Shown here piece after piece: positions 10,620-51,288 of a DNA stretch of 64,000 bases. Position 1 is the first letter of the stretch. Every line of letters begins with the position of its first letter. Both the position numbers and the translations under genes were made by a program. The stretch spans positions 124,001 to 188,000 of IMG/VR virus record IMGVR_UViG_3300004151_000006, one strand, 5' to 3'. Below the pieces are notes generated by a model. It worked only from the letters and a program-made list of their open reading frames with translations. It was not told the origin of the DNA and did no database searches.

Positions 10620-12014
10620 ATGTCTACTGCTACCAACACCGCTATGGCTGATGATACCATCACCCTGTCCAAGTCCTATTTTAAGGATGCCTTTGGTGCT
10701 CATGTGGAGTACCTCACGGACATCAGTTTGGAAAATTTCGCATTCTACAAGGACAACAAGACCCAGTCCTTTAAAGGTCATGTTTGTGTTGTGGATGGGA
10801 ATCAGTTCCCTGACAACATTGTTGACATTACCATGATCAAGGCACGCCTGGTCATCATCCAGAACTGCCAGACAGTCACCATCGGCCGTATCGATGCTGG
10901 TGATATTCTGATTGGTTCTTGTGGTCAGGTGACGGTTGCTGAGATCAAGACGGACACACTCTGCGCACTCACCATGAATCAGCTTGGCATTGGTGAGATT
11001 CACTGTGATAAGTTCGTGGGTTTCATCAACATGGGGCTCATTAAGAAAGGTATGATCTCGGATATGGCCATTTGTGCCACCGGACTGCAGTATGACTGCC
11101 GTGTTCTGGATCCCCAGATCTACACCCACCACTTCACCCTCTTTGGTGAAAACACTTTCAACTCGGAGAAGCTCGAGTTCTTCATGAACACCAAGAGCCT
11201 TTCCAAGCTGGATCGTTGGTTGTTCAATCACGATCCTGAAGATGCGGAATATTCCATCCGAAATGAAGTCTTGACAGGTTTCGTTTTTGAGTACACCATA
11301 TGCGGGGATTTCCCTGTGCAGTGGCTCATGGATCCTGGAAACATCCCGCATTTTACCTCTCTCATGGACAAGTATGATTACTTGACCAAGACCACTGAAT
11401 CCCAACGCCGTAAGGCCATTGATGCCATCAAGATCGAAGATGGTGTCTTTGACTTTATCGGAGATATCTGGGGTGGGGTCTGTGAGACAGTCGGCGACAT
11501 CACGGACACCGTCGGTGATTTCGTCTTTGGTGCACGTGATACTGGGGAAAAGAAAGACCCCGTGGTGGAGGAAGCTAAGGCCATTCTTGAAGAGGCTTTC
11601 TCTGATGAAGAGGAAGAAAAAGTTGAAGACCCCGATGCACCCGATACACCCTGGATGGATCCCAACATCATGCATGTGCGTCCTTCTGGGACATACAAGG
11701 AACGTGATATCACCGAAGCTGACATCAAGGAGATGATGGATGCTGGGATTATCCCCCCCACTGCAACAGTCCAACCCCAACCACAAGCATCTACTGTCGA
11801 TGTGGACATGGATCCGATGACAGCAGATCCGGCATCGACTCCGACCTTTGTGCCCCACATCATTGGTGGTACTCCGGCTGCGGCACCCATGGTGGGAATG
11901 GGTATTACCCCAATCATGGAAGATCCCATGGCCAATGAGATCATGGGGGATCTTCGTGTCAAGACCAGTGAGGAGTCGACTGCTCCCACCCCCAATGGCA
12001 AGAAAAAGAAGTAA
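10620..12014 (+). CDS. Early protein with beta-solenoid-like N-terminus and acidic/Pro-rich disordered C-terminus
   Basis: AAGGAGG RBS before ATG 10620; repeating short beta-strand pattern; promoter at 10550. Confidence 0.7.
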   Translation: MSTATNTAMADDTITLSKSYFKDAFGAHVEYLTDISLENFAFYKDNKTQSFKGHVCVVDGNQFPDNIVDITMIKARLVIIQNCQTVTIGRIDAGDILIGSCGQVTVAEIKTDTLCALTMNQLGIGEIHCDKFVGFINMGLIKKGMISDMAICATGLQYDCRVLDPQIYTHHFTLFGENTFNSEKLEFFMNTKSLSKLDRWLFNHDPEDAEYSIRNEVLTGFVFEYTICGDFPVQWLMDPGNIPHFTSLMDKYDYLTKTTESQRRKAIDAIKIEDGVFDFIGDIWGGVCETVGDITDTVGDFVFGARDTGEKKDPVVEEAKAILEEAFSDEEEEKVEDPDAPDTPWMDPNIMHVRPSGTYKERDITEADIKEMMDAGIIPPTATVQPQPQASTVDVDMDPMTADPASTPTFVPHIIGGTPAAAPMVGMGITPIMEDPMANEIMGDLRVKTSEESTAPTPNGKKKK

Positions 12015-14578: not shown

Positions 14579-16885
14579 TTAAGGATTGGTGGGCAACGGA
14601 AGCGGAGTCTCCGTGGGGACCAGGGAGATCTTCGCGTACAGGTCGATCAGCTTGCTGATGTTGACCACGTTGAGGTAGATGCCGATCGGGTTGGTGATGA
14701 GCGGGAGCTCACGGGCGTTGGCAAAGACGCGCTTGTTGACGCCGCCACCGATCTGCGGGTTGTAGTGGGCAAGATAGGTACCGAAGTCCCAATTGTGCCC
14801 AAAGTTCAAGATAGATTCGGGATCACCTTCACGGTACGGGAGGATGAGGATCTTTTCCCGCATGGTGTTGTAGGTGCACGAGACACACTCGAGGATGACG
14901 CCGTTGGGCAGGATCCGACGGTACTCGACGACTTCACCATCGAAAGCCATGTTCGTATTCCCTTCCATGTGATTATGGATATGGGGAATATTAAACAGGT
15001 TTTCGAGGATGATGTTCGACGTGATCAGCTTGTAGACCGGCTTTTCGCCGCTATTGAGCTGCGTCTTGTAGTAGGAGTTCTGGTGGATCAAGCTGAAGAT
15101 GTTGATCAGCTGGAGTTCCACGTACTGGCGGATATCGCCGAGGATATCCGAAGACCGGATGGAGTCGACGTTCGAGCAGTCGATGGTCGACACGATGACG
15201 TAGGGGTTGACCAGCTGCGAGGCCACGTACTCGAAGCCGACCCGATCCTCGAAGGAGCGGAATTCCGGATTCGGATTCTCGGCCTTGATACGGTCATAGA
15301 CCTGACGCAGGGTCGTGCTGACCAGCTTGAGCATACGATCGTCCTGGCCCAGGCTGATGGCCTCGGTGACGTTGCTCATGACATACTCAGGCAGGGCCTG
15401 CTGCAGAGCATAGTCGACGATGTAGTTACGACCAACCGGGATTTCCCAGGTCTGGGTCTTGTAGTGCGAACGGACGGCCACGTTCGATTTCCGAAGGTTC
15501 TCTTCAGAGAACTTGGAGTCGAGCTTATACGCGATGACTTCGGTCTTGATGTCGGCCATGACCGCAGCCACGGGCGCCGGGACAGCATCGCTATCCGGAT
15601 GATACGCAGTCGGGTAGGCACTGCCGGTGCAACGGGTATCCGCCCACTGCAGAGACAGATAAGGAGACGCATCGATCATGCAGGTGATGGCTTCCCGCGG
15701 AGTGAGATTGGCAAAGATCTCGGTGTCGGTGCCGGCCATGGTCTTGAGGCTCTTGTCCAGCAGGAAGGTCTGGGTGAAGTTCGCCCGACGATCACCGGAG
15801 TAGCGGTTGTTGTTGTGCATGATCAGGCGGGAGCCGTAGTACGGCGAGGTGTCGAACTCGATGTCCTCGGTCTTGCCGCCAGAGATGAAGCGCACGACCA
15901 CGGACTCGAGGATCGCACCATCAGCGATCAAGTCCGTGTAGTCGGTCATGGTAAAGCCGTAGACGTTGGGCAGGCGAGACAGGTCCATCATGTTGGCAGT
16001 CTTGCCGCAACGGATGTAGTTGTCCGCCAGCAGGACGTCGTCGTCGTCGTTGTCCTTCAGGACTTCGATACGCCGCAGGGTGTTGGAGACCATGGAGGGG
16101 TCGCCGTAGAGATGGATAAAGGGCTTGCGATGTTCCTGGGACTGCCGTTCCTTGGAGGTGGGCGCCATGGACTTGTTGAGGTCATAGACTTCGGCCCAGG
16201 GGATCACGTAGTTGATCACGGTCTGGGGAGAGGTCCGACGATGCATCACACGGTTGATCAGCCCACGGTGGAACTTGAGCAACGTGACGGTCATGGCAAT
16301 GCGGATGTCTGGCAGGACGCGGTCGGTATCGGCACCGAAGGCTTCCATACCCGGAGTGAACGAAGTCAAGAACTCGGCATGCAGCGATTCCGGGATGACC
16401 TGATGCAGATCCAGCAGATTCTGCTTCTGATCCGGAAGCGTATCGCTGGTAGCGAAGTGTCGAGACTGCGCCATAGCGCCATTGCCACGGTTGTTGTAGA
16501 GCAGCTGGCCAAGTGCCGGGATAGCCATGGCCTTGATGCGATCATTTTTCAGATCGCAGGAATCGCACAGCACGCCCAGGCTTTCCGGGCTCATGAAGGC
16601 GTCGGTGAACGACATCGTGCTGTTGAAGGCTTCACAGGAAGCGGTGACCTGACCAAAGGCTTCAGCATTGACCAGGCTATCAGAGACCGGGCTGCCGCCG
16701 TTGCCGAGGTTGTTCATGTTGATGAAGTCGGTGACGTTCTTCCAGATCTTGGTGATGAGCTTGCGTTCAGCAGCAGAGACATGGCCACTGTTATTTTTGG
16801 CATATCCCATGGATTCACAGGCAGCCAGAAAACCCTGGTAACCAGCGAGATCACCTGAAGCAGAAGGCATATTGTTGTTAAACAT
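14579..16885 (-). CDS. Major capsid protein (phiKZ gp120-like)
   Basis: About 770 aa, strongly codon-biased, two genes from DnaB as in phiKZ; N-terminal propeptide with G/A/S-x-E sites (PGMEAFG); GGGAG RBS before ATG 16885. Confidence 0.8.
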   Translation of the reverse strand: MFNNNMPSASGDLAGYQGFLAACESMGYAKNNSGHVSAAERKLITKIWKNVTDFINMNNLGNGGSPVSDSLVNAEAFGQVTASCEAFNSTMSFTDAFMSPESLGVLCDSCDLKNDRIKAMAIPALGQLLYNNRGNGAMAQSRHFATSDTLPDQKQNLLDLHQVIPESLHAEFLTSFTPGMEAFGADTDRVLPDIRIAMTVTLLKFHRGLINRVMHRRTSPQTVINYVIPWAEVYDLNKSMAPTSKERQSQEHRKPFIHLYGDPSMVSNTLRRIEVLKDNDDDDVLLADNYIRCGKTANMMDLSRLPNVYGFTMTDYTDLIADGAILESVVVRFISGGKTEDIEFDTSPYYGSRLIMHNNNRYSGDRRANFTQTFLLDKSLKTMAGTDTEIFANLTPREAITCMIDASPYLSLQWADTRCTGSAYPTAYHPDSDAVPAPVAAVMADIKTEVIAYKLDSKFSEENLRKSNVAVRSHYKTQTWEIPVGRNYIVDYALQQALPEYVMSNVTEAISLGQDDRMLKLVSTTLRQVYDRIKAENPNPEFRSFEDRVGFEYVASQLVNPYVIVSTIDCSNVDSIRSSDILGDIRQYVELQLINIFSLIHQNSYYKTQLNSGEKPVYKLITSNIILENLFNIPHIHNHMEGNTNMAFDGEVVEYRRILPNGVILECVSCTYNTMREKILILPYREGDPESILNFGHNWDFGTYLAHYNPQIGGGVNKRVFANARELPLITNPIGIYLNVVNISKLIDLYAKISLVPTETPLPLPTNP

Positions 16886-16978
16886 GGACGTGGCACTCCC
16901 ATTAGGTGTGGTAGTAGGTGTCAAAACACGCTAGGTGAGTTGGGGCGTGTTGAAACAGAACAATATAGATCTTTAGAC

Positions 16979-23076: not shown

Positions 23077-24249
23077 ATGTACAGTGCTAACTTTGCTACC
23101 CCTGCTGCTCGTGAAGAATCCAATGTCAATACCAACGCTGCTCGTGGACCCCGGTACAACATGCCTGCCATCGGCGCCCGTGCGGCCCTGGATTTCCTGA
23201 AGAAGCATTTCCAGGCCCTCAAAGAGGGCACTGAAGATTTTATTCCGACGACGCCCGACGGCGAGTACACCATCGAGACGGCCCTGTCCGGCCATCGCTA
23301 TGCCAACGGCCAGACCGGCATGTGGGAGTGTGGTGGCAGCATGGGAGCCTACGGCGCCTGCAACGTCATTGCCGGCCCCGATGCCCAGCCGCTCAATCCC
23401 TTGCACCAGCACCATGTCAACCCCGAGCATGCCTGCGACAAGCATGTGCTCCTGCCCGTCAAGGAAGGATATATCATGGCGCATGCTGCCTTCGCTGAAG
23501 GCAACGTCCTGATCACCGCTTGGCGCTGCGAGACCCTGGCCTTTGATGCCGGTGACAACCCGGAACGTGGCGGTGTCACCCGCGCCACCTTCAAGCTCAT
23601 CTATGCGGCCGACGGCATCGATGCCTTGCCCCTCTTCCTCGCCGAGGAAGAAGAAGCGACCCCCGACAACCAGATGTTCCAGGCCTTTCTCAAGGCGGCG
23701 TGGACCAAGGCCAACATGTTCCGCTGCCAGTCCCAGGTGTGGGCCTATCCCTGGGCGCCCTGGATCGTCAAGAAGGGGGGTCGTGAGTGGGACCTGCCTG
23801 AAATCGTGGCTGCCCAGGAAGGCATCATCGAAGCCCTGACCGGCGTCGGCCTCTCCGACCCCGATCCCAAATCGGTCGTCACCGACTACAACACCATGGT
23901 CGCCGAAATCGAAGATGCGGCGTCCAAGGCCATCTACAAGTTCCGCAACGCCAGCAGCAACCCCCGTGGACCCCGTGTCCATGTCCTGCAGTACTTTACG
24001 CAGGAAGAAAACAGCTCGAAAGTGCGCGTGACCAACTTCGTGCTGCTGCACAACATCAAGACCCCGAAGATCTTGGCCACCAGGATCTACTACGCGGATC
24101 CCAACACCACCATGCAAAGCGAGCGCCCCGAACCGGCCTACTACCTCAACAATCGCCGGTTCATGCGCTGGGATCTCATCAAGTCCAAATTCGCGGACGA
24201 GGCCACCGGCGGCGAATGCAAGTTCGTCTACGAGTACACCGGCTGCTAG
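23077..24249 (+). CDS. Very GC-rich early hypothetical protein
   Basis: Early promoter at 22991, TAAGGAG RBS, hairpin at 24276. Confidence 0.75.
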   Translation: MYSANFATPAAREESNVNTNAARGPRYNMPAIGARAALDFLKKHFQALKEGTEDFIPTTPDGEYTIETALSGHRYANGQTGMWECGGSMGAYGACNVIAGPDAQPLNPLHQHHVNPEHACDKHVLLPVKEGYIMAHAAFAEGNVLITAWRCETLAFDAGDNPERGGVTRATFKLIYAADGIDALPLFLAEEEEATPDNQMFQAFLKAAWTKANMFRCQSQVWAYPWAPWIVKKGGREWDLPEIVAAQEGIIEALTGVGLSDPDPKSVVTDYNTMVAEIEDAASKAIYKFRNASSNPRGPRVHVLQYFTQEENSSKVRVTNFVLLHNIKTPKILATRIYYADPNTTMQSERPEPAYYLNNRRFMRWDLIKSKFADEATGGECKFVYEYTGC

Positions 24250-48155: not shown

Positions 48156-49316
48156 TTACCCGTTATATATTTTTTCATGTAAAGATAAGATACGTATCTC
48201 GATATAATCTCTGAGTTCATGGTGTTTACAGTTTGTCCAGGGTCTATTGTTTTTAAGCCTATTGATGATACGTTTGTATTCCACTAAGATAGTTTTAAAT
48301 AAAGTATTTTTAGGATTTAGTTTTAAAATATTAAAAATGAGTTCAAAGATATCAATCTCTTTTAAGATAGTGAGAAACATATATGGTCGTTTATGATCAG
48401 TATACCAACGTGTTTGACTGGATATCAAGAGATCTCTCAATGATCCGGAAAATAATAGATCCGTATTGAGAAGATTAATAGCTCTTGTATTATTGTGTTT
48501 AATGAGATCGAATTCTTTAAATAAAGATAGCATTCCATCGGTGTAAGTAGTAGTTATCTTACCATATTGATTTTCTACTTCTATTTCATCATAAGTCCTA
48601 GTAGATACAGTATCTAATGTATCAATATTGATCAACCATCGTAATTGTTTCATGAGCCAAATATTGGTGAGATCTGATTGAAAAGTATTATAAATGAAAT
48701 TCTTATAAAAGAATAAATTAGCTGAAGTGATATCTGGATATTGCATTATACCTTCTTTCTTAAATTTATACCATTTAAATATTAATGCTATTGGATCAAT
48801 CAAAAATATACATTGACTGGGTAATTGGTCATAAAAACGTATCCTACTTCCATTGAGATTAAGACTGAATTCATCACTATCATGCCACCAGACTTTCATG
48901 ACAGATATGTCTTTCCAAATATCCCATCCACTATTAAATGGTAAATATTGTAACGTATCAAGATCTTCATTCGATATGACAAATTCTTTTGTATAGCTCC
49001 CAGAGATATAATAGCGTCTAAAGATACTGCCTGTGTGGGTAGTGTCATATTTACTTATAAGTTCATTTCTTAAATCTGATATATAAAACATATATCGATC
49101 TACATCATTGGAGAATTTATTCATGTATTTCAAATCTACCATATGACAAAGAATATCGAGTAATCGCATACCATGTGGATAACTATTACTGTTACCATTT
49201 AAGTATTGATTGGTTTTATTGTTAGTATAGATTCTCATTCGTTCAAGGTAGTATTTATATTTAGGTATGGACCTTGGTGCACCTGGAGGAATATGATCTA
49301 AGAGATAATTCAGCAC
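48156..49316 (-). CDS. Hypothetical protein
   Basis: 386 aa, AAGGAG RBS, divergent from the putative chimallin gene. Confidence 0.6.
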   Translation of the reverse strand: MLNYLLDHIPPGAPRSIPKYKYYLERMRIYTNNKTNQYLNGNSNSYPHGMRLLDILCHMVDLKYMNKFSNDVDRYMFYISDLRNELISKYDTTHTGSIFRRYYISGSYTKEFVISNEDLDTLQYLPFNSGWDIWKDISVMKVWWHDSDEFSLNLNGSRIRFYDQLPSQCIFLIDPIALIFKWYKFKKEGIMQYPDITSANLFFYKNFIYNTFQSDLTNIWLMKQLRWLINIDTLDTVSTRTYDEIEVENQYGKITTTYTDGMLSLFKEFDLIKHNNTRAINLLNTDLLFSGSLRDLLISSQTRWYTDHKRPYMFLTILKEIDIFELIFNILKLNPKNTLFKTILVEYKRIINRLKNNRPWTNCKHHELRDYIEIRILSLHEKIYNG

Positions 49317-49396
49317 ATGAAATTCTCCTTATATTGTCATACTTTTAAACTATAGGATTGTAAAAACTTATAGGGTCTAATATCCAAAATAACTTG

Positions 49397-49409
49397 AGAT
49401 ATATATTAT
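49397..49409 (+). promoter_or_regulatory. Putative early promoter of chimallin
   Basis: AGATATATATTAT. Confidence 0.65.
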
Positions 49410-49536
49410 CATAGTGGTGATACAATATAAAGATAGATTTTGGCACGACGGTGACCATCATAGTCTGTCCGAACATAGCGTATCACTACGCGTCTGGACG
49501 CATCATTCACCCTTACCTCCATGGAGGAGAACATTC

Positions 49537-51288
49537 ATGGCTCTTACCACTTCGACGACTGGTTCGACTGCTCCCAATGCTCAACCGCAGGGTGCACCCA
49601 CCATGCAGCCCACTGCATCAGCTGCTACCGCTACTGCAGTGTCACCTGATCCGACCATGATCACCACCCCCATCAATACCACTACGGCTCCTCGTCCGGA
49701 AGAGGGTGCTATTCCCAATAAGAAAGATCGCGGCAATATCCGTGACTTGCTCCATAAAGCCCCTATCCCGATGGCCATGAGTGAAGGTGCTACCAAGTAC
49801 ATTGAAGGTCTTAAGAAGTACTACGCTGAACATCAAAATATCGAATACCGAAATATCCGTGTCAATGCTCTGGCCCAGTTGCCCGGCGTCTTCATGGTTG
49901 AATACAATGATCGTGTGGCTCCTCTGATCATGCATGAGATGGTCGGCAGCATGATTGCAGACAACTCTCCTGACACCGTCGTCATGCGTCAGGCTGCCCA
50001 GGTCTATGCCCAGTACGTTCGGGGAAACATCGAAGCTCGGTTTACGCTGCTGCCGGCTGTGGTAATTCATCCTTCGGATTACCACAAGGTCGAGATCATG
50101 GGCAGCATCTTGTCCAACACCCTGTCCAATATCTCCGGACAGGAGTCTATCAATTCAGCAGTTCTCAAAAATGAACCGTTGATCATCTCGATCAACCAGT
50201 CGGAAGTCATGCCGTTCATTGATCGGCTGTCTCCGCATGGCATCCCTGGTCGGCACGACATCGGCTTCAAGCTGAGCCTGGCTCCCCAGAACATGAACTA
50301 CCAGTCCCGCAACGAGATGTTCGGCAACTGGAAAAATGAGATCGAGGATATCGCCGCTGTCACGGCATATACCGAGATTATCACTGGTCCGATTGATCCC
50401 ATGACTGGTATCCCCAAGTTCGTCCCGGTGGTTCATATCACCGACGTTCTGTCGCGTATCCAGGATATCAGGATGTACGTTATCCTGGTTTCCCTGGCTG
50501 CCGAGATCTTCATTCGTCAGGGCCTCTGGGAACACCAGTTCGCCCGTTTTAACAAGGATGAGCCCAACCTTGGATATCTGGTCAATGACCCCAATACCAA
50601 GGACCTCATGTTCATCGATAGTGCTCCGGCACTCAAGAGCTTCATCTATACCTACATGACTCCTCCGGTCCTGGTCGTCGACACCCTGGACGGACGGTCA
50701 CGTATCCCGGATACCGAGTTGACGGTCCTCTCGGCATCTGCGGATCTCAATGCCTACAAGCGGCAGGTCCTGACTAACTGCTTCAAAGAGCTCTGCACCA
50801 CGTTGAGCCTTGATCAGGCCAATGCTCTGGTGCCATTCCAGCCGTATTCTTACGAGAATACCGGATTGGCTTCCATCGGCGGCAGTCTCACGGACACTCG
50901 CGAGATCGACTACCTGCGTCTGGCTACCAACTGGAAGTCTGAAGTCGGCACCGCAGCCCTGCTCATGCAGCGTGCAGCTGGTGCCAAGCCGTCAGATCGT
51001 TTCGATCTGCAGAAGCGCTTCTACAGCGATGCTGTGGCGCTTTACAACAACAACATCATCCGTGTCGATCTGTCTTCCATCGCTGCCATCCAGTCCGAGA
51101 TCAGCCGTAACATCACGTTGGATCGTACGTCCTGGTCTCCCAGCATGGCCAACATCGACCTCACCGGCGCCATCGACGATACCCGCAAGTTCCTCAGTGG
51201 AGCTGGCAGTCTGGGTGTCAATGGCGGAGCCTTCGTCAATATGTCGACCATGTCCATCTATGGTGGGCCTGGTTACTACGGTCGTTAG
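49537..51288 (+). CDS. chmA: Chimallin, phage nuclear shell protein (phiKZ gp54-like)
   Basis: About 583 aa; disordered Thr/Ala/Pro N-terminus and Gly/Tyr C-terminal tail; strong codon bias; early promoter; directly upstream of nvRNAP beta'-N as in phiKZ; LTDTREIDYL. Confidence 0.75.
   Translation: MALTTSTTGSTAPNAQPQGAPTMQPTASAATATAVSPDPTMITTPINTTTAPRPEEGAIPNKKDRGNIRDLLHKAPIPMAMSEGATKYIEGLKKYYAEHQNIEYRNIRVNALAQLPGVFMVEYNDRVAPLIMHEMVGSMIADNSPDTVVMRQAAQVYAQYVRGNIEARFTLLPAVVIHPSDYHKVEIMGSILSNTLSNISGQESINSAVLKNEPLIISINQSEVMPFIDRLSPHGIPGRHDIGFKLSLAPQNMNYQSRNEMFGNWKNEIEDIAAVTAYTEIITGPIDPMTGIPKFVPVVHITDVLSRIQDIRMYVILVSLAAEIFIRQGLWEHQFARFNKDEPNLGYLVNDPNTKDLMFIDSAPALKSFIYTYMTPPVLVVDTLDGRSRIPDTELTVLSASADLNAYKRQVLTNCFKELCTTLSLDQANALVPFQPYSYENTGLASIGGSLTDTREIDYLRLATNWKSEVGTAALLMQRAAGAKPSDRFDLQKRFYSDAVALYNNNIIRVDLSSIAAIQSEISRNITLDRTSWSPSMANIDLTGAIDDTRKFLSGAGSLGVNGGAFVNMSTMSIYGGPGYYGR

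What the first reader, a model, noticed from the sequence alone, without database searches (positions are those of the whole stretch)
49414..49536. Highly structured 5' leader of the putative chimallin mRNA with RBS-overlapping palindrome
Seen: just after the early promoter, GTGGTGATAC (49414-23) can pair with GTATCACTAC (49480-89). This encloses GATAGAT/GTCTGTC and TGGCAC-GACG-GTGACCA stems that use G-U pairs, which points to RNA-level structure. It is followed by GCGTC-TG-GACGC and by CCTCC-AT-GGAGG, which overlaps the Shine-Dalgarno sequence. Inference: a cis-regulatory RNA controlling translation or stability of the shell-protein mRNA, for example by autoregulation.
Basis: partly seen in the sequence, partly recalled or inferred. 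Interest (0 to 1): 0.6.

Follow-up and report, generated by a model that had tools for sequence, protein, structure and literature searches.

The report
Structured leader of chimallin mRNA
The roughly 120 bases before the phage-nucleus shell gene of a 287-kb freshwater giant phage very likely form a folded mRNA leader that starts with a long hairpin, and leaders of this gene across related phages are unexpectedly rich in perfect palindromes; what the leader does is untested.

Summary
In detail: every stem is at the stated coordinates. The gene is chimallin by predicted fold (Foldseek E 4e-16 to 7e-13 against solved chimallins) and by its position beside the RNA polymerase beta-prime gene. The "early promoter" is real: it is one of 49 same-strand copies of a phiKZ/AR9-type virion-polymerase promoter. 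That consensus places the transcription start at G49416, so the long hairpin (49416-49487) begins at the first base of the mRNA.

The hairpin folds better than shuffles (z -3.7; -4.3 in the only alignable relative). It folds better on the sense strand than the antisense strand. It keeps its stability despite 18 of 76 differences in that relative, including compensatory changes. The leader is an outlier among this genome's early leaders: 121 nt and GC 0.46, against about 43 nt and 0.30.

The palindrome over the ribosome-binding site is real, but the site is hardly less accessible than in other early genes.

New here: in 17 chimallin leaders, zero-spacer palindromes of 10 nt or more occur 21 times against 1.4 expected, often over the ribosome-binding site or the AUG.

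Most likely this is a cis-acting leader whose 5'-terminal stem-loop stabilises the mRNA. Autoregulation by ChmA has no support. No RNA data exist for this phage.

The parts
49378..49415 (+). Early promoter of the virion RNA polymerase type: tCCA box 49383-86, core GAGATATATATTAT 49396-49409, then 6 nt (49410-15).
   Evidence: A position-weight-matrix scan of the 286,688-bp genome finds 49 plus-strand copies of tCAt-N10-tttaAAtATATAT(T/C)AY-N5-TGA. This copy scores 24 bits. It has the same architecture as the AR9 early consensus AAATATATATTAT-(6N)-G+1 and the promoters of phiKZ and phiR1-37 (PMC5312081; PMC7058600). It is invariant in L002.
49416..49416 (+). Predicted transcription start (+1, G).
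   Evidence: By analogy only. The conserved G lies 6 nt after the AT-rich element, and that position is the mapped start in AR9, phiKZ and phiR1-37 (PMC5312081; 'centred at about -10', PMC7598289). No RNA data exist for this phage.
49416..49487 (+). 5'-terminal long imperfect hairpin. Outer stem 49416-23/49480-87; middle stem 49426-28/49475-77; inner stem 49432-39/49462-69 (two U-G pairs); apical stem 49441-46/49451-53 plus 49455-57; loop GACG 49447-50.
   Evidence: Minimum-energy and centroid structures agree; -22.9 kcal/mol, z -3.7; the antisense strand is weaker. The probability that nt 1-4 are paired is 0.98. L002 keeps an equally stable hairpin despite 18 of 76 differences; 2-4% of mutated controls are as stable.
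49427..49458 (+). 32-nt run identical in L002, covering the 5' side and apex of the hairpin, including its loop and bulge.
   Evidence: This is longer than any identical run in the 1.7-kb coding alignment (maximum 24). The coding sequence is 78% identical at nucleotide level and 58-63% at third codon positions. The chance of such a run is about 0.04 even at coding-level identity.
49490..49501 (+). Short GC hairpin GCGU-CUGG-ACGC.
   Evidence: Predicted. It is invariant in L002, so there is no covariation information. No U-run follows, so it is not an intrinsic terminator.
49502..49515 (+). Unpaired C/A-rich spacer AUCAUUCACCCUUA.
   Evidence: Unpaired in all folds. It varies in L002, including a 1-nt insertion. 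Similar CAUCA(A/U)C strings appear in several other chmA leaders.
49516..49527 (+). Perfect 12-nt palindrome CCTCCATGGAGG; its right arm is the SD (GGAGGAG 49523-29).
   Evidence: It is the only palindrome of 10 nt or more in the leader, against about 0.11 expected. It sits inside a 23-nt run (49512-34) identical in L002. Opening the SD costs 6.8 kcal/mol, about 5th of 49 early genes.
49537..51288 (+). Chimallin (ChmA, phage-nucleus shell protein) gene, 583 aa, GC3 0.65.
   Evidence: AlphaFold model with pLDDT 77. The nine best Foldseek PDB matches are all chimallin/PhuN chains, E 4e-16 to 7e-13, TM about 0.6. A 36%-identical relative carries PF25677 Chimallin_Phikzvirus. The next gene is an RNA polymerase beta-type subunit (phrog_2987), and the same gene order is seen in 12 named phages.
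49350..49356 (-). CCTATAG motif (read on the minus strand), probably the late promoter of the divergent gene 48156-49316. It is not part of the leader but explains the conserved block upstream of the early promoter.
   Evidence: atCCTATAG, then about 35 nt, then SD and ATG, recurs before four other genes. It is conserved as CTATAGGAT or CTATAAGAT in L002, L007 and L009.

Best explanation
49416-49536 is the 121-nt 5' untranslated leader of the early chimallin mRNA of a 287-kb freshwater phiKZ-like phage. The virion RNA polymerase makes this transcript. Transcription most likely starts at G49416.

The first 72 nt fold on themselves into a long imperfect hairpin whose base includes nucleotide +1. 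A 4-bp GC hairpin follows, then an unpaired C/A-rich spacer, then a strong Shine-Dalgarno sequence that is half of a 12-nt palindrome.

I think the leader acts in cis on the RNA. The 5'-terminal stem-loop hides the 5' end from 5'-end-dependent decay (RNase E / RppH-type). That would prolong the life of an mRNA whose product is needed in very large amounts within minutes of injection. The ribosome-binding site stays about as accessible as in other early genes. The invariant apex of the hairpin and the palindrome probably also serve as recognition sites for an unidentified factor.

Shown: the sequence features, folding statistics, conservation, the promoter family and the chimallin fold. Inferred: the start site, the existence of the fold in vivo and the stabilising function.
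For: - Promoter and start site: there are 49 copies of the promoter. Its consensus matches the experimentally mapped AR9, phiKZ and phiR1-37 early promoters, where the start lies 6 nt downstream (PMC5312081; PMC7598289).
- Hairpin statistics: the 74-nt domain has z -3.7 in the window and -4.3 in L002, and sense folds better than antisense by 4-8 kcal/mol.
- Conservation: L002 (ChmA 77-78% identical) has 18 of 76 differences, mostly in the 3' arm, yet its energy is -27.2 against -25.9 kcal/mol. Random substitutions at the same sites give -21.5 +/- 2.9, and 3.6% are as stable. Random sites give 0.3%. One pair changes U:A to C:G, and a G-U becomes G-C.
- Outlier within its own genome: 121-122 nt against a median of about 43 nt; GC 0.46 against about 0.30; energy per nt second of 49.
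- Paired 5' end: P = 0.98 here. It is at least 0.79 in 11 of 17 chmA leaders of other lineages, against 12 of 48 other early RNAs of this genome (binomial 6e-4, not corrected for relatedness).
- Not coding: L002 has two 1-nt indels and in-frame stops.
Against: - There are no RNA data of any kind. The start site rests on analogy.
- phiKZ gp54 also has a secondary, middle-class start (PMC8244752), so later transcripts may lack the hairpin.
- Only one alignable relative exists, so no real covariation statistics are possible.
- The whole-leader z is only about -2.
- A quarter of other early RNAs also have paired 5' ends, and 6 of 17 chmA leaders do not.
- The host and its decay machinery are unknown.
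- The family-wide excess of zero-spacer palindromes is not what selection for hairpins predicts.
Confidence: 0.5

Rival explanations
1. Translational operator. A phage protein (ChmA itself, or another early protein) binds the invariant apex of the hairpin and/or the SD palindrome and represses or times translation.
For: A 32-nt run (49427-58) and a 23-nt run around the SD are identical in L002, loops and bulge included. That is more than structure alone requires (chance about 0.04 or less). Palindromes over the SD or AUG recur in L009, Eowyn, PhiPA3, 201phi2-1 and P0011.
Against: No RNA-binding activity of ChmA is known in the papers searched. The intrinsic accessibility of the ribosome-binding site is ordinary. 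No candidate binder was identified. Two sequences cannot separate sequence constraint from low divergence.
Confidence: 0.2
2. DNA-level element. The zero-spacer palindromes are symmetric double-stranded DNA sites for a dimeric DNA-binding protein, or part of an internal middle/late promoter. They would control chmA transcription after the early phase.
For: Inverted repeats with arms of at least 5 nt and spacer 0: 15 observed against 0.96 expected in 11 leaders, and 6 against 0.48 in 6 further leaders. No shuffle out of 300 reached either count. Spacers 1-8 are only about twofold enriched in the first set. Controls are at baseline: own genome 0.17 per 100 nt, other early leaders 0.18, chmA-to-RNAP spacers 0.08, chmA coding sequence 0.14. 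Compensatory changes keep the symmetry perfect: RP12 GCTTTGCAAAGC against FLC4-3B GCTCTGCAGAGC; phiKZ TTCTTGATCAAGAA against PhiPA3 TACTTGATCAAGTA. phiKZ gp54 has a second, middle-class start.
Against: The palindromes differ in sequence within one leader and between phages, so a single factor is not obvious. The long hairpin of this window has G-U pairs and strand asymmetry, which points to RNA. The same compensatory changes also fit RNA stems.
Confidence: 0.15
3. Chance or composition. A GC-richer stretch next to a GC3-rich gene folds well by itself, and the features have no function.
For: The whole-leader z is only -1.9 to -2.3. One palindrome in one leader is weak evidence. The features were noticed first and tested afterwards.
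Against: Shuffles keep dinucleotide content, yet the hairpin domain gives z -3.7 and -4.3. The fold is kept through 18 differences. The leader is more conserved than the coding sequence. The palindrome excess was replicated on a second set chosen after the hypothesis was formed.
Confidence: 0.08
4. Capture by a host CsrA/RsmA-type regulator. There are two GGA motifs 27 nt apart, one at the loop of the GC hairpin (49496-98) and one in the SD (49523-25).
For: The sequence shows this arrangement. L009 has two CAAGGA motifs 30 nt apart at the corresponding places. The typical layout of CsrA sites is from my own knowledge, not tested here.
Against: GGA is part of any strong SD. The upstream site lacks the usual A at -2. 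In L009 the GGA lies in a stem. The host is unknown. No statistical test was done.
Confidence: 0.04
5. The leader is coding (an N-terminal extension from GTG 49414 or a small upstream ORF), or it yields a small RNA by premature termination.
For: The frame from 49414 is open and in phase with the ATG at 49537. Small RNAs derived from 5' UTRs are reported in phiKZ and 201phi2-1 (PMC10914365; PMC11512511).
Against: GTG 49414 lies upstream of the predicted start. L002 has two frame-breaking indels and stops in that frame. A strong SD precedes ATG 49537. No U-run follows either hairpin, and no terminator was found there.
Confidence: 0.03

Closest known systems
5'-terminal stem-loop mRNA stabilisers (the E. 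coli ompA 5' UTR is the classic case; from my own knowledge)
   Same: A hairpin lies at or within a few nucleotides of the 5' end of a very abundant mRNA. It is followed by an unpaired stretch and a good ribosome-binding site, and it acts in cis.
   Different: There is no sequence relation. This hairpin is much longer (72 nt, four helical segments). The transcript is made by a phage virion polymerase. The host and its decay enzymes are unknown. The stabilising effect is untested.
Phage translational operators (T4 gene 32, T4 regA targets, MS2 coat-protein hairpin; from my own knowledge)
   Same: A structured or palindromic element lies at the ribosome-binding site of an abundant structural or early gene, with sequence-level conservation beyond what pairing needs.
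   Different: No binding protein is known. ChmA is not known to bind RNA. The intrinsic accessibility of the site is ordinary.
Structured 5' UTR elements and 5'-UTR-derived small RNAs of giant phages phiKZ and 201phi2-1 (PMC10914365; PMC11512511)
   Same: The same phage group, and conserved structured leaders upstream of key genes (for example the tail gene gp182/gp277).
   Different: Those arise by premature termination and were not reported for the chimallin gene. This leader has no terminator. The papers searched do not describe a chmA leader structure.
phiKZ/AR9-type early promoters of virion RNA polymerases (PMC5312081; PMC7598289; PMC8244752)
   Same: An AT-rich TATATATTAT core with G six bases downstream, dozens of copies on one strand, and one copy directly upstream of chmA, as for phiKZ gp54.
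   Different: This concerns the promoter, not the leader. The upstream tCAt box and its spacing are specific to this clade.

Membership tests
Chimallin (ChmA, phage-nucleus shell protein) | Chimallin fold over the whole length | tested here: met
   AlphaFold model with pLDDT 77. The nine top Foldseek PDB hits are all chimallin/PhuN, E 4e-16 to 7e-13, TM 0.53-0.65, 540-579 aligned columns.
Chimallin (ChmA, phage-nucleus shell protein) | Sequence match to Pfam PF25677 or to solved chimallins | tested here: not met
   No Pfam, PHROG or PDB sequence hit for the window's protein or for a 40-sequence profile. The link is only indirect: P0005 (36% identical) carries PF25677, and P0004 does so faintly.
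Chimallin (ChmA, phage-nucleus shell protein) | Gene order: divergent gene of about 350-390 aa, then chmA, then the non-virion RNA polymerase beta-prime gene | tested here: met
   Window. The same order is seen in phiKZ, PhiPA3, Noxifer, RAY, Goslar, Eowyn, RP12 and others.
phiKZ/AR9-type virion-polymerase early promoter | AT-rich core TATATATTAY with a conserved G six bases downstream, in many copies on one strand | tested here: met
   49 plus-strand copies; this copy is at 49396-49416. Consensus from PMC5312081.
phiKZ/AR9-type virion-polymerase early promoter | Transcription starting there early in infection | not testable with these tools
   No RNA run holds this sequence.
5'-terminal stem-loop stabiliser | Stem within about 0-4 nt of the mRNA 5' end | tested here: inconclusive
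   Met if the start is G49416: the probability that nt 1-4 are paired is 0.98. The start site is inferred, not measured.
5'-terminal stem-loop stabiliser | The hairpin lengthens mRNA half-life | not testable with these tools
   Needs half-life measurements of wild-type and stem mutants.
SD-sequestering translational control element | The ribosome-binding site is markedly less accessible than in comparable genes | tested here: not met
   Opening -18..+12 costs 9.5 kcal/mol against a median of 9.0 (19th of 49). The SD alone costs 6.8, about 5th of 49.
Any Rfam family (riboswitch, leader, sRNA) | Covariance-model match | tested here: not met
   Only two chance-level hits, to SCARNA15 and TCL6_3, with E of 3 or more.
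Intrinsic terminator / attenuator | GC hairpin followed by a U-run | tested here: not met
   No terminator-like site in 49317-49536. Hairpin 2 is followed by AUCAUUCACCC.

The most novel reading that the evidence does not exclude
Across nucleus-forming giant phages, the chimallin leader carries zero-spacer palindromes (21 observed against 1.4 expected in 17 leaders), often centred on the ribosome-binding site or the AUG. These could be recognition sites for an as yet unknown symmetric (dimeric) factor, or RNA-RNA pairing sites. They would set the timing or amount of shell-protein synthesis: a conserved checkpoint of phage-nucleus assembly that no paper searched here describes.
Probability: 0.2. 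Interest if true: 0.75.

Novelty: new member of a known kind. Interest (0 to 1): 0.5.

Why it matters
Chimallin is the first protein a nucleus-forming phage must make in bulk. Blocking its synthesis aborts infection. How its expression is set is unknown. This work provides three things:
- A defined leader with a predicted start site.
- A hairpin with evidence of selection.
- A family-wide palindrome signature that is also present in phiKZ, 201phi2-1, PhiPA3, Goslar and RAY.

The signature can be tested directly in genetically tractable phages. It also gives candidate parts for strong, stable expression in phage engineering. If the leader is only a stabiliser, it is an ordinary but useful annotation.

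Tried and rejected
- **Sequence identification of the protein failed.** PHROGs, Pfam, PDB by sequence and by profile, and tblastn against phages all gave nothing. It was solved by fold.
- **Few relatives for covariation.** blastn of the leader against phages found nothing. Protein-based scans of viral contigs returned only the same phage. The metagenome scan returned the source contig and one 26%-identical locus, L005, which was not used. The genome-contig scan found none. Three exact-pattern scans of viral contigs returned only the same contig. L002 is therefore the only alignable relative, and no covariance model was built.
- **Sequencing runs.** Four freshwater DNA runs hold identical sequence with no variants. 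One run holds a 74-nt relative with 4 differences, but its letters are not shown.
- **Rfam:** nothing.
- **Rejected readings.** Coding extension from GTG 49414. Intrinsic terminator or attenuator. Strong SD sequestration.
- **Mapped starts in phiKZ.** The exact coordinates for gp54 could not be read: supplements are not held and Ceyssens 2014 is not held.
- **Not tested.** The CsrA idea and the CAUCA motif were seen by eye only.
- **Not run.** Complex prediction: no protein pair is claimed to bind.
- **Genetic code.** No genetic code other than table 11 was used.

Full report
**1. What is there**

The window is bases 124001-188000 of a single 286,688-bp contig. The same sequence occurs in freshwater metagenomes: IMG/VR contig 3300004154_000368, a 300-kb JGI contig, and four freshwater runs.

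The ORF behind the finding starts at ATG 49537, preceded by GGAGGAG at 49523-29. On its own it matches no PHROG, Pfam family or PDB sequence, and a 40-sequence profile does not either. Three lines of evidence still identify it as chimallin:
- An AlphaFold model built on that alignment (pLDDT 77) matches only chimallin/PhuN structures at the top. These are phiPA3, 201phi2-1 and Goslar, with E 4e-16 to 7e-13 and TM about 0.6 over the whole length.
- A 36%-identical relative carries PF25677 Chimallin_Phikzvirus.
- The next gene is an RNA polymerase beta-type subunit, the gene order found in every named chimallivirus I fetched.

So "putative chimallin" is right.

**2. Promoter and start site**

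The TATATATTAT before the leader is one of 49 plus-strand copies of a long motif, tCAt-N10-tttaAAtATATAT(T/C)AY-N5-TGA. This is the early-promoter class of phage virion RNA polymerases:
- AR9's mapped consensus is AAATATATATTAT-(6N)-G+1.
- phiKZ and phiR1-37 start 6 nt after the element (PMC5312081).
- The AT-rich block is centred near -10 (PMC7598289).
- phiKZ gp54 itself has an early-motif primary start (PMC8244752).

Applied here, +1 is G49416. This is inference; no RNA run holds the sequence. It cannot be excluded for later ones, because phiKZ gp54 also has a middle-class secondary start.

**3. The fold**

From G49416 the first 72 nt form a four-segment hairpin whose base includes nucleotide +1. 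A 4-bp GC hairpin follows (49490-501), then an unpaired C/A-rich spacer, then the SD palindrome.

- The hairpin domain scores z -3.7 in the window and z -4.3 in L002.
- The antisense strands are 4-8 kcal/mol weaker.
- Among the 49 early leaders of this genome, most are 14-60 nt, about 0.30 GC and unstructured. This one is 121-122 nt, GC 0.46, and second in energy per nucleotide.
- The sequence directly upstream (49317-49415) has GC 0.23.

**4. Comparison with the one alignable relative**

L002 is a 2.5-kb metagenome contig whose ChmA is 77-78% identical.

- Its coding sequence is 78% identical at nucleotide level and 58-63% at third codon positions. The longest identical run in it is 24 nt.
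- Its leader has identical runs of 32 nt (49427-58, the 5' side and apex of the hairpin) and 23 nt (49512-34, around the SD palindrome).
- By contrast, the 3' arm differs at 13 of 20 positions.
- The hairpin nevertheless stays as stable: -27.2 against -25.9 kcal/mol. Random substitutions at the same 18 sites give -21.5 +/- 2.9, and 3.6% are as stable. Permuting L002's letters gives 2.3%. Random sites give 0.3%.
- One pair changes on both sides (U:A to C:G), one G-U becomes G-C, and new pairs replace an internal loop.
- Two 1-nt indels and in-frame stops in L002 rule out the open frame from GTG 49414 as coding.

This is suggestive evidence of selection for the fold. It is not a covariation test, because there are only two sequences.

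**5. The ribosome-binding site**

CCTCCATGGAGG is a perfect palindrome, but a 2-nt loop is impossible. The real options are a 4-bp stem with a CAUG loop, or CCAUGGA pairing with UUCAUGG across the start codon.

Opening -18..+12 costs 9.5 kcal/mol against a median of 9.0 for the 49 early genes. Opening the SD alone costs 6.8, about 5th of 49. Several other early genes here also carry an anti-SD next to the SD. Strong intrinsic translational repression is therefore not supported.

**6. Other chimallin leaders**

I fetched chmA upstream regions from these sources:
- Metagenomic relatives L007 (36%) and L009/L010 (34%).
- phiKZ, PhiPA3, 201phi2-1, Noxifer, RAY, Goslar, Eowyn and RP12.

Each of these eleven lineages (the window included) has the same promoter type with G six bases downstream. 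LucasX was also fetched but shows no such promoter and was left out of the leader counts. Leaders are 58-123 nt.

Two patterns emerged.

*(a) A paired 5' end.* The probability that nt 1-4 are paired is at least 0.79 in 11 of 17 lineages other than L002. The baseline is 12 of 48 other early RNAs of this genome. The binomial probability is 6e-4, not corrected for relatedness. The feature is enriched, not universal.

*(b) Perfect palindromes.* In the first 11 leaders (1,012 nt), inverted repeats with arms of at least 5 nt and zero spacer occur 15 times against 0.96 expected from dinucleotide shuffles; none of 300 shuffles reached that. Spacers 1-8 together give 12 against about 6.4. Controls are at baseline:

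| Control region | Palindromes per 100 nt |
|---|---|
| Own genome | 0.17 |
| The 48 other early leaders | 0.18 |
| Spacers between chmA and the polymerase gene | 0.08 |
| chmA coding sequences | 0.14 |
| 25 kb of phiKZ | 0.17 |

Because this was noticed after the fact, I tested six more leaders chosen afterwards: DT01, FLC4-3B, pEa_SNUABM_54, Psa21, P0010 and P0011. They gave 6 against 0.48 expected, again with no shuffle of 300 reaching it.

Several palindromes sit on the SD or the AUG:
- SD: window; L009 GGAGATCTCC; Eowyn CCTTATAAGG.
- AUG: PhiPA3 AGACATGTCT; 201phi2-1 GAATCATGATTC; P0011 AGCCATGGCT.

Related phages keep the symmetry through double changes: RP12 GCTTTGCAAAGC against FLC4-3B GCTCTGCAGAGC, and phiKZ TTCTTGATCAAGAA against PhiPA3 TACTTGATCAAGTA.

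A hairpin needs no self-complementary loop. The zero-spacer bias therefore points to symmetric recognition, either of double-stranded DNA by a dimer or of an RNA duplex, rather than to plain hairpin selection. I cannot decide between these.

**7. Interpretation**

- **Best reading (0.5):** a cis-acting leader whose 5'-terminal stem-loop protects an mRNA needed in bulk immediately after injection, with an ordinary, accessible ribosome-binding site.

The invariant apex and the palindromes suggest a trans-acting partner in addition to any stabilising role, so these readings are not mutually exclusive.

**8. Novelty**

The papers searched describe early promoters, start-site maps and 5'-UTR-derived small RNAs in phiKZ and 201phi2-1. 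None describes a chimallin leader structure or a palindrome excess. As a structured 5' leader it is a new member of a known kind. The palindrome signature is the part a specialist might find unexpected.

**Limits**

- No transcript data.
- One alignable relative.
- Start sites in all metagenomic leaders are predicted by motif.
- The lineages compared are not independent.
- The host is unknown.

Noticed in passing
window 49537-51288; 10620-12014; 23077-24249; 14.5-16.9 kb: A few genes are islands of high GC3 (0.54-0.78; chmA 0.65, its L002 and L009 homologues 0.79 and 0.67) in a genome whose other genes have GC3 of 0.20-0.26. For 14.5-16.9 kb the plus-strand ORF has GC1 of 0.77, so the real gene is probably 14579-16924 on the minus strand. 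None of the four matches a PHROG. This looks like strong codon or mRNA-level selection on very highly expressed genes.
   Followed up: partly
window 49350-49356 (minus strand); genome positions 213806, 286595, 270539(-), 86(-): atCCTATAG, followed after about 35 nt by an SD and ATG, recurs before several genes, including the divergent neighbour 48156-49316. It is conserved in L002, L007 and L009. It is a candidate late (non-virion polymerase) promoter, comparable to the TATG late motif of phiKZ.
   Followed up: partly
whole genome (G000), 49 sites; in the window e.g. 1244, 5106, 9726, 22996, 37428, 51403, 59327: All 49 good matches to the early-promoter motif lie on the plus strand. The single weak minus-strand match (17.5 bits) is doubtful.
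   Followed up: yes
genome positions 225994, 249982, 283916 (outside the window): Three early promoters are followed by similar leader sequences (gaagac..gaaatgatgat..ctcgaggactcgacatgatca). The first is the most structured early leader in the genome (z -4.3). This may be a repeated leader element or a small RNA.
   Followed up: no
early-gene ribosome-binding sites across the genome, e.g. window 51403 and 95761-type sites: Many early genes carry a short anti-SD next to the SD (ATCCTTGGAGGAT, ATTCCTGGAGGAAT, GAGTATACTC). SD mini-hairpins are therefore a habit of this genome, not a speciality of chmA.
   Followed up: partly
window 49500-49509; L009 2472-2480; L011 14-21; L013 (201phi2-1); L019 (RP12); L021 (FLC4-3B) leaders: A C/A-rich string, CAUCA(A/U)C (GCAUCAAC in three unrelated leaders), recurs in the unpaired part of chmA leaders upstream of the SD. 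Seen by eye only; no statistics were run.
   Followed up: no
L009/L010 2281-2500 and window 49317-49536: The spacer between the divergent 386-aa gene and chmA is exactly 220 nt in both the window and a phage whose ChmA is only 34% identical. The neighbour is 386 aa in both.
   Followed up: no
L012 (PhiPA3) 853: The annotated start of PhiPA3 gp053 lies about 100 nt downstream of an ATG that has a good SD (AAAGGAAAAAGACATG) and sits in the position homologous to the phiKZ and 201phi2-1 starts. The annotated start is probably too far downstream.
   Followed up: no
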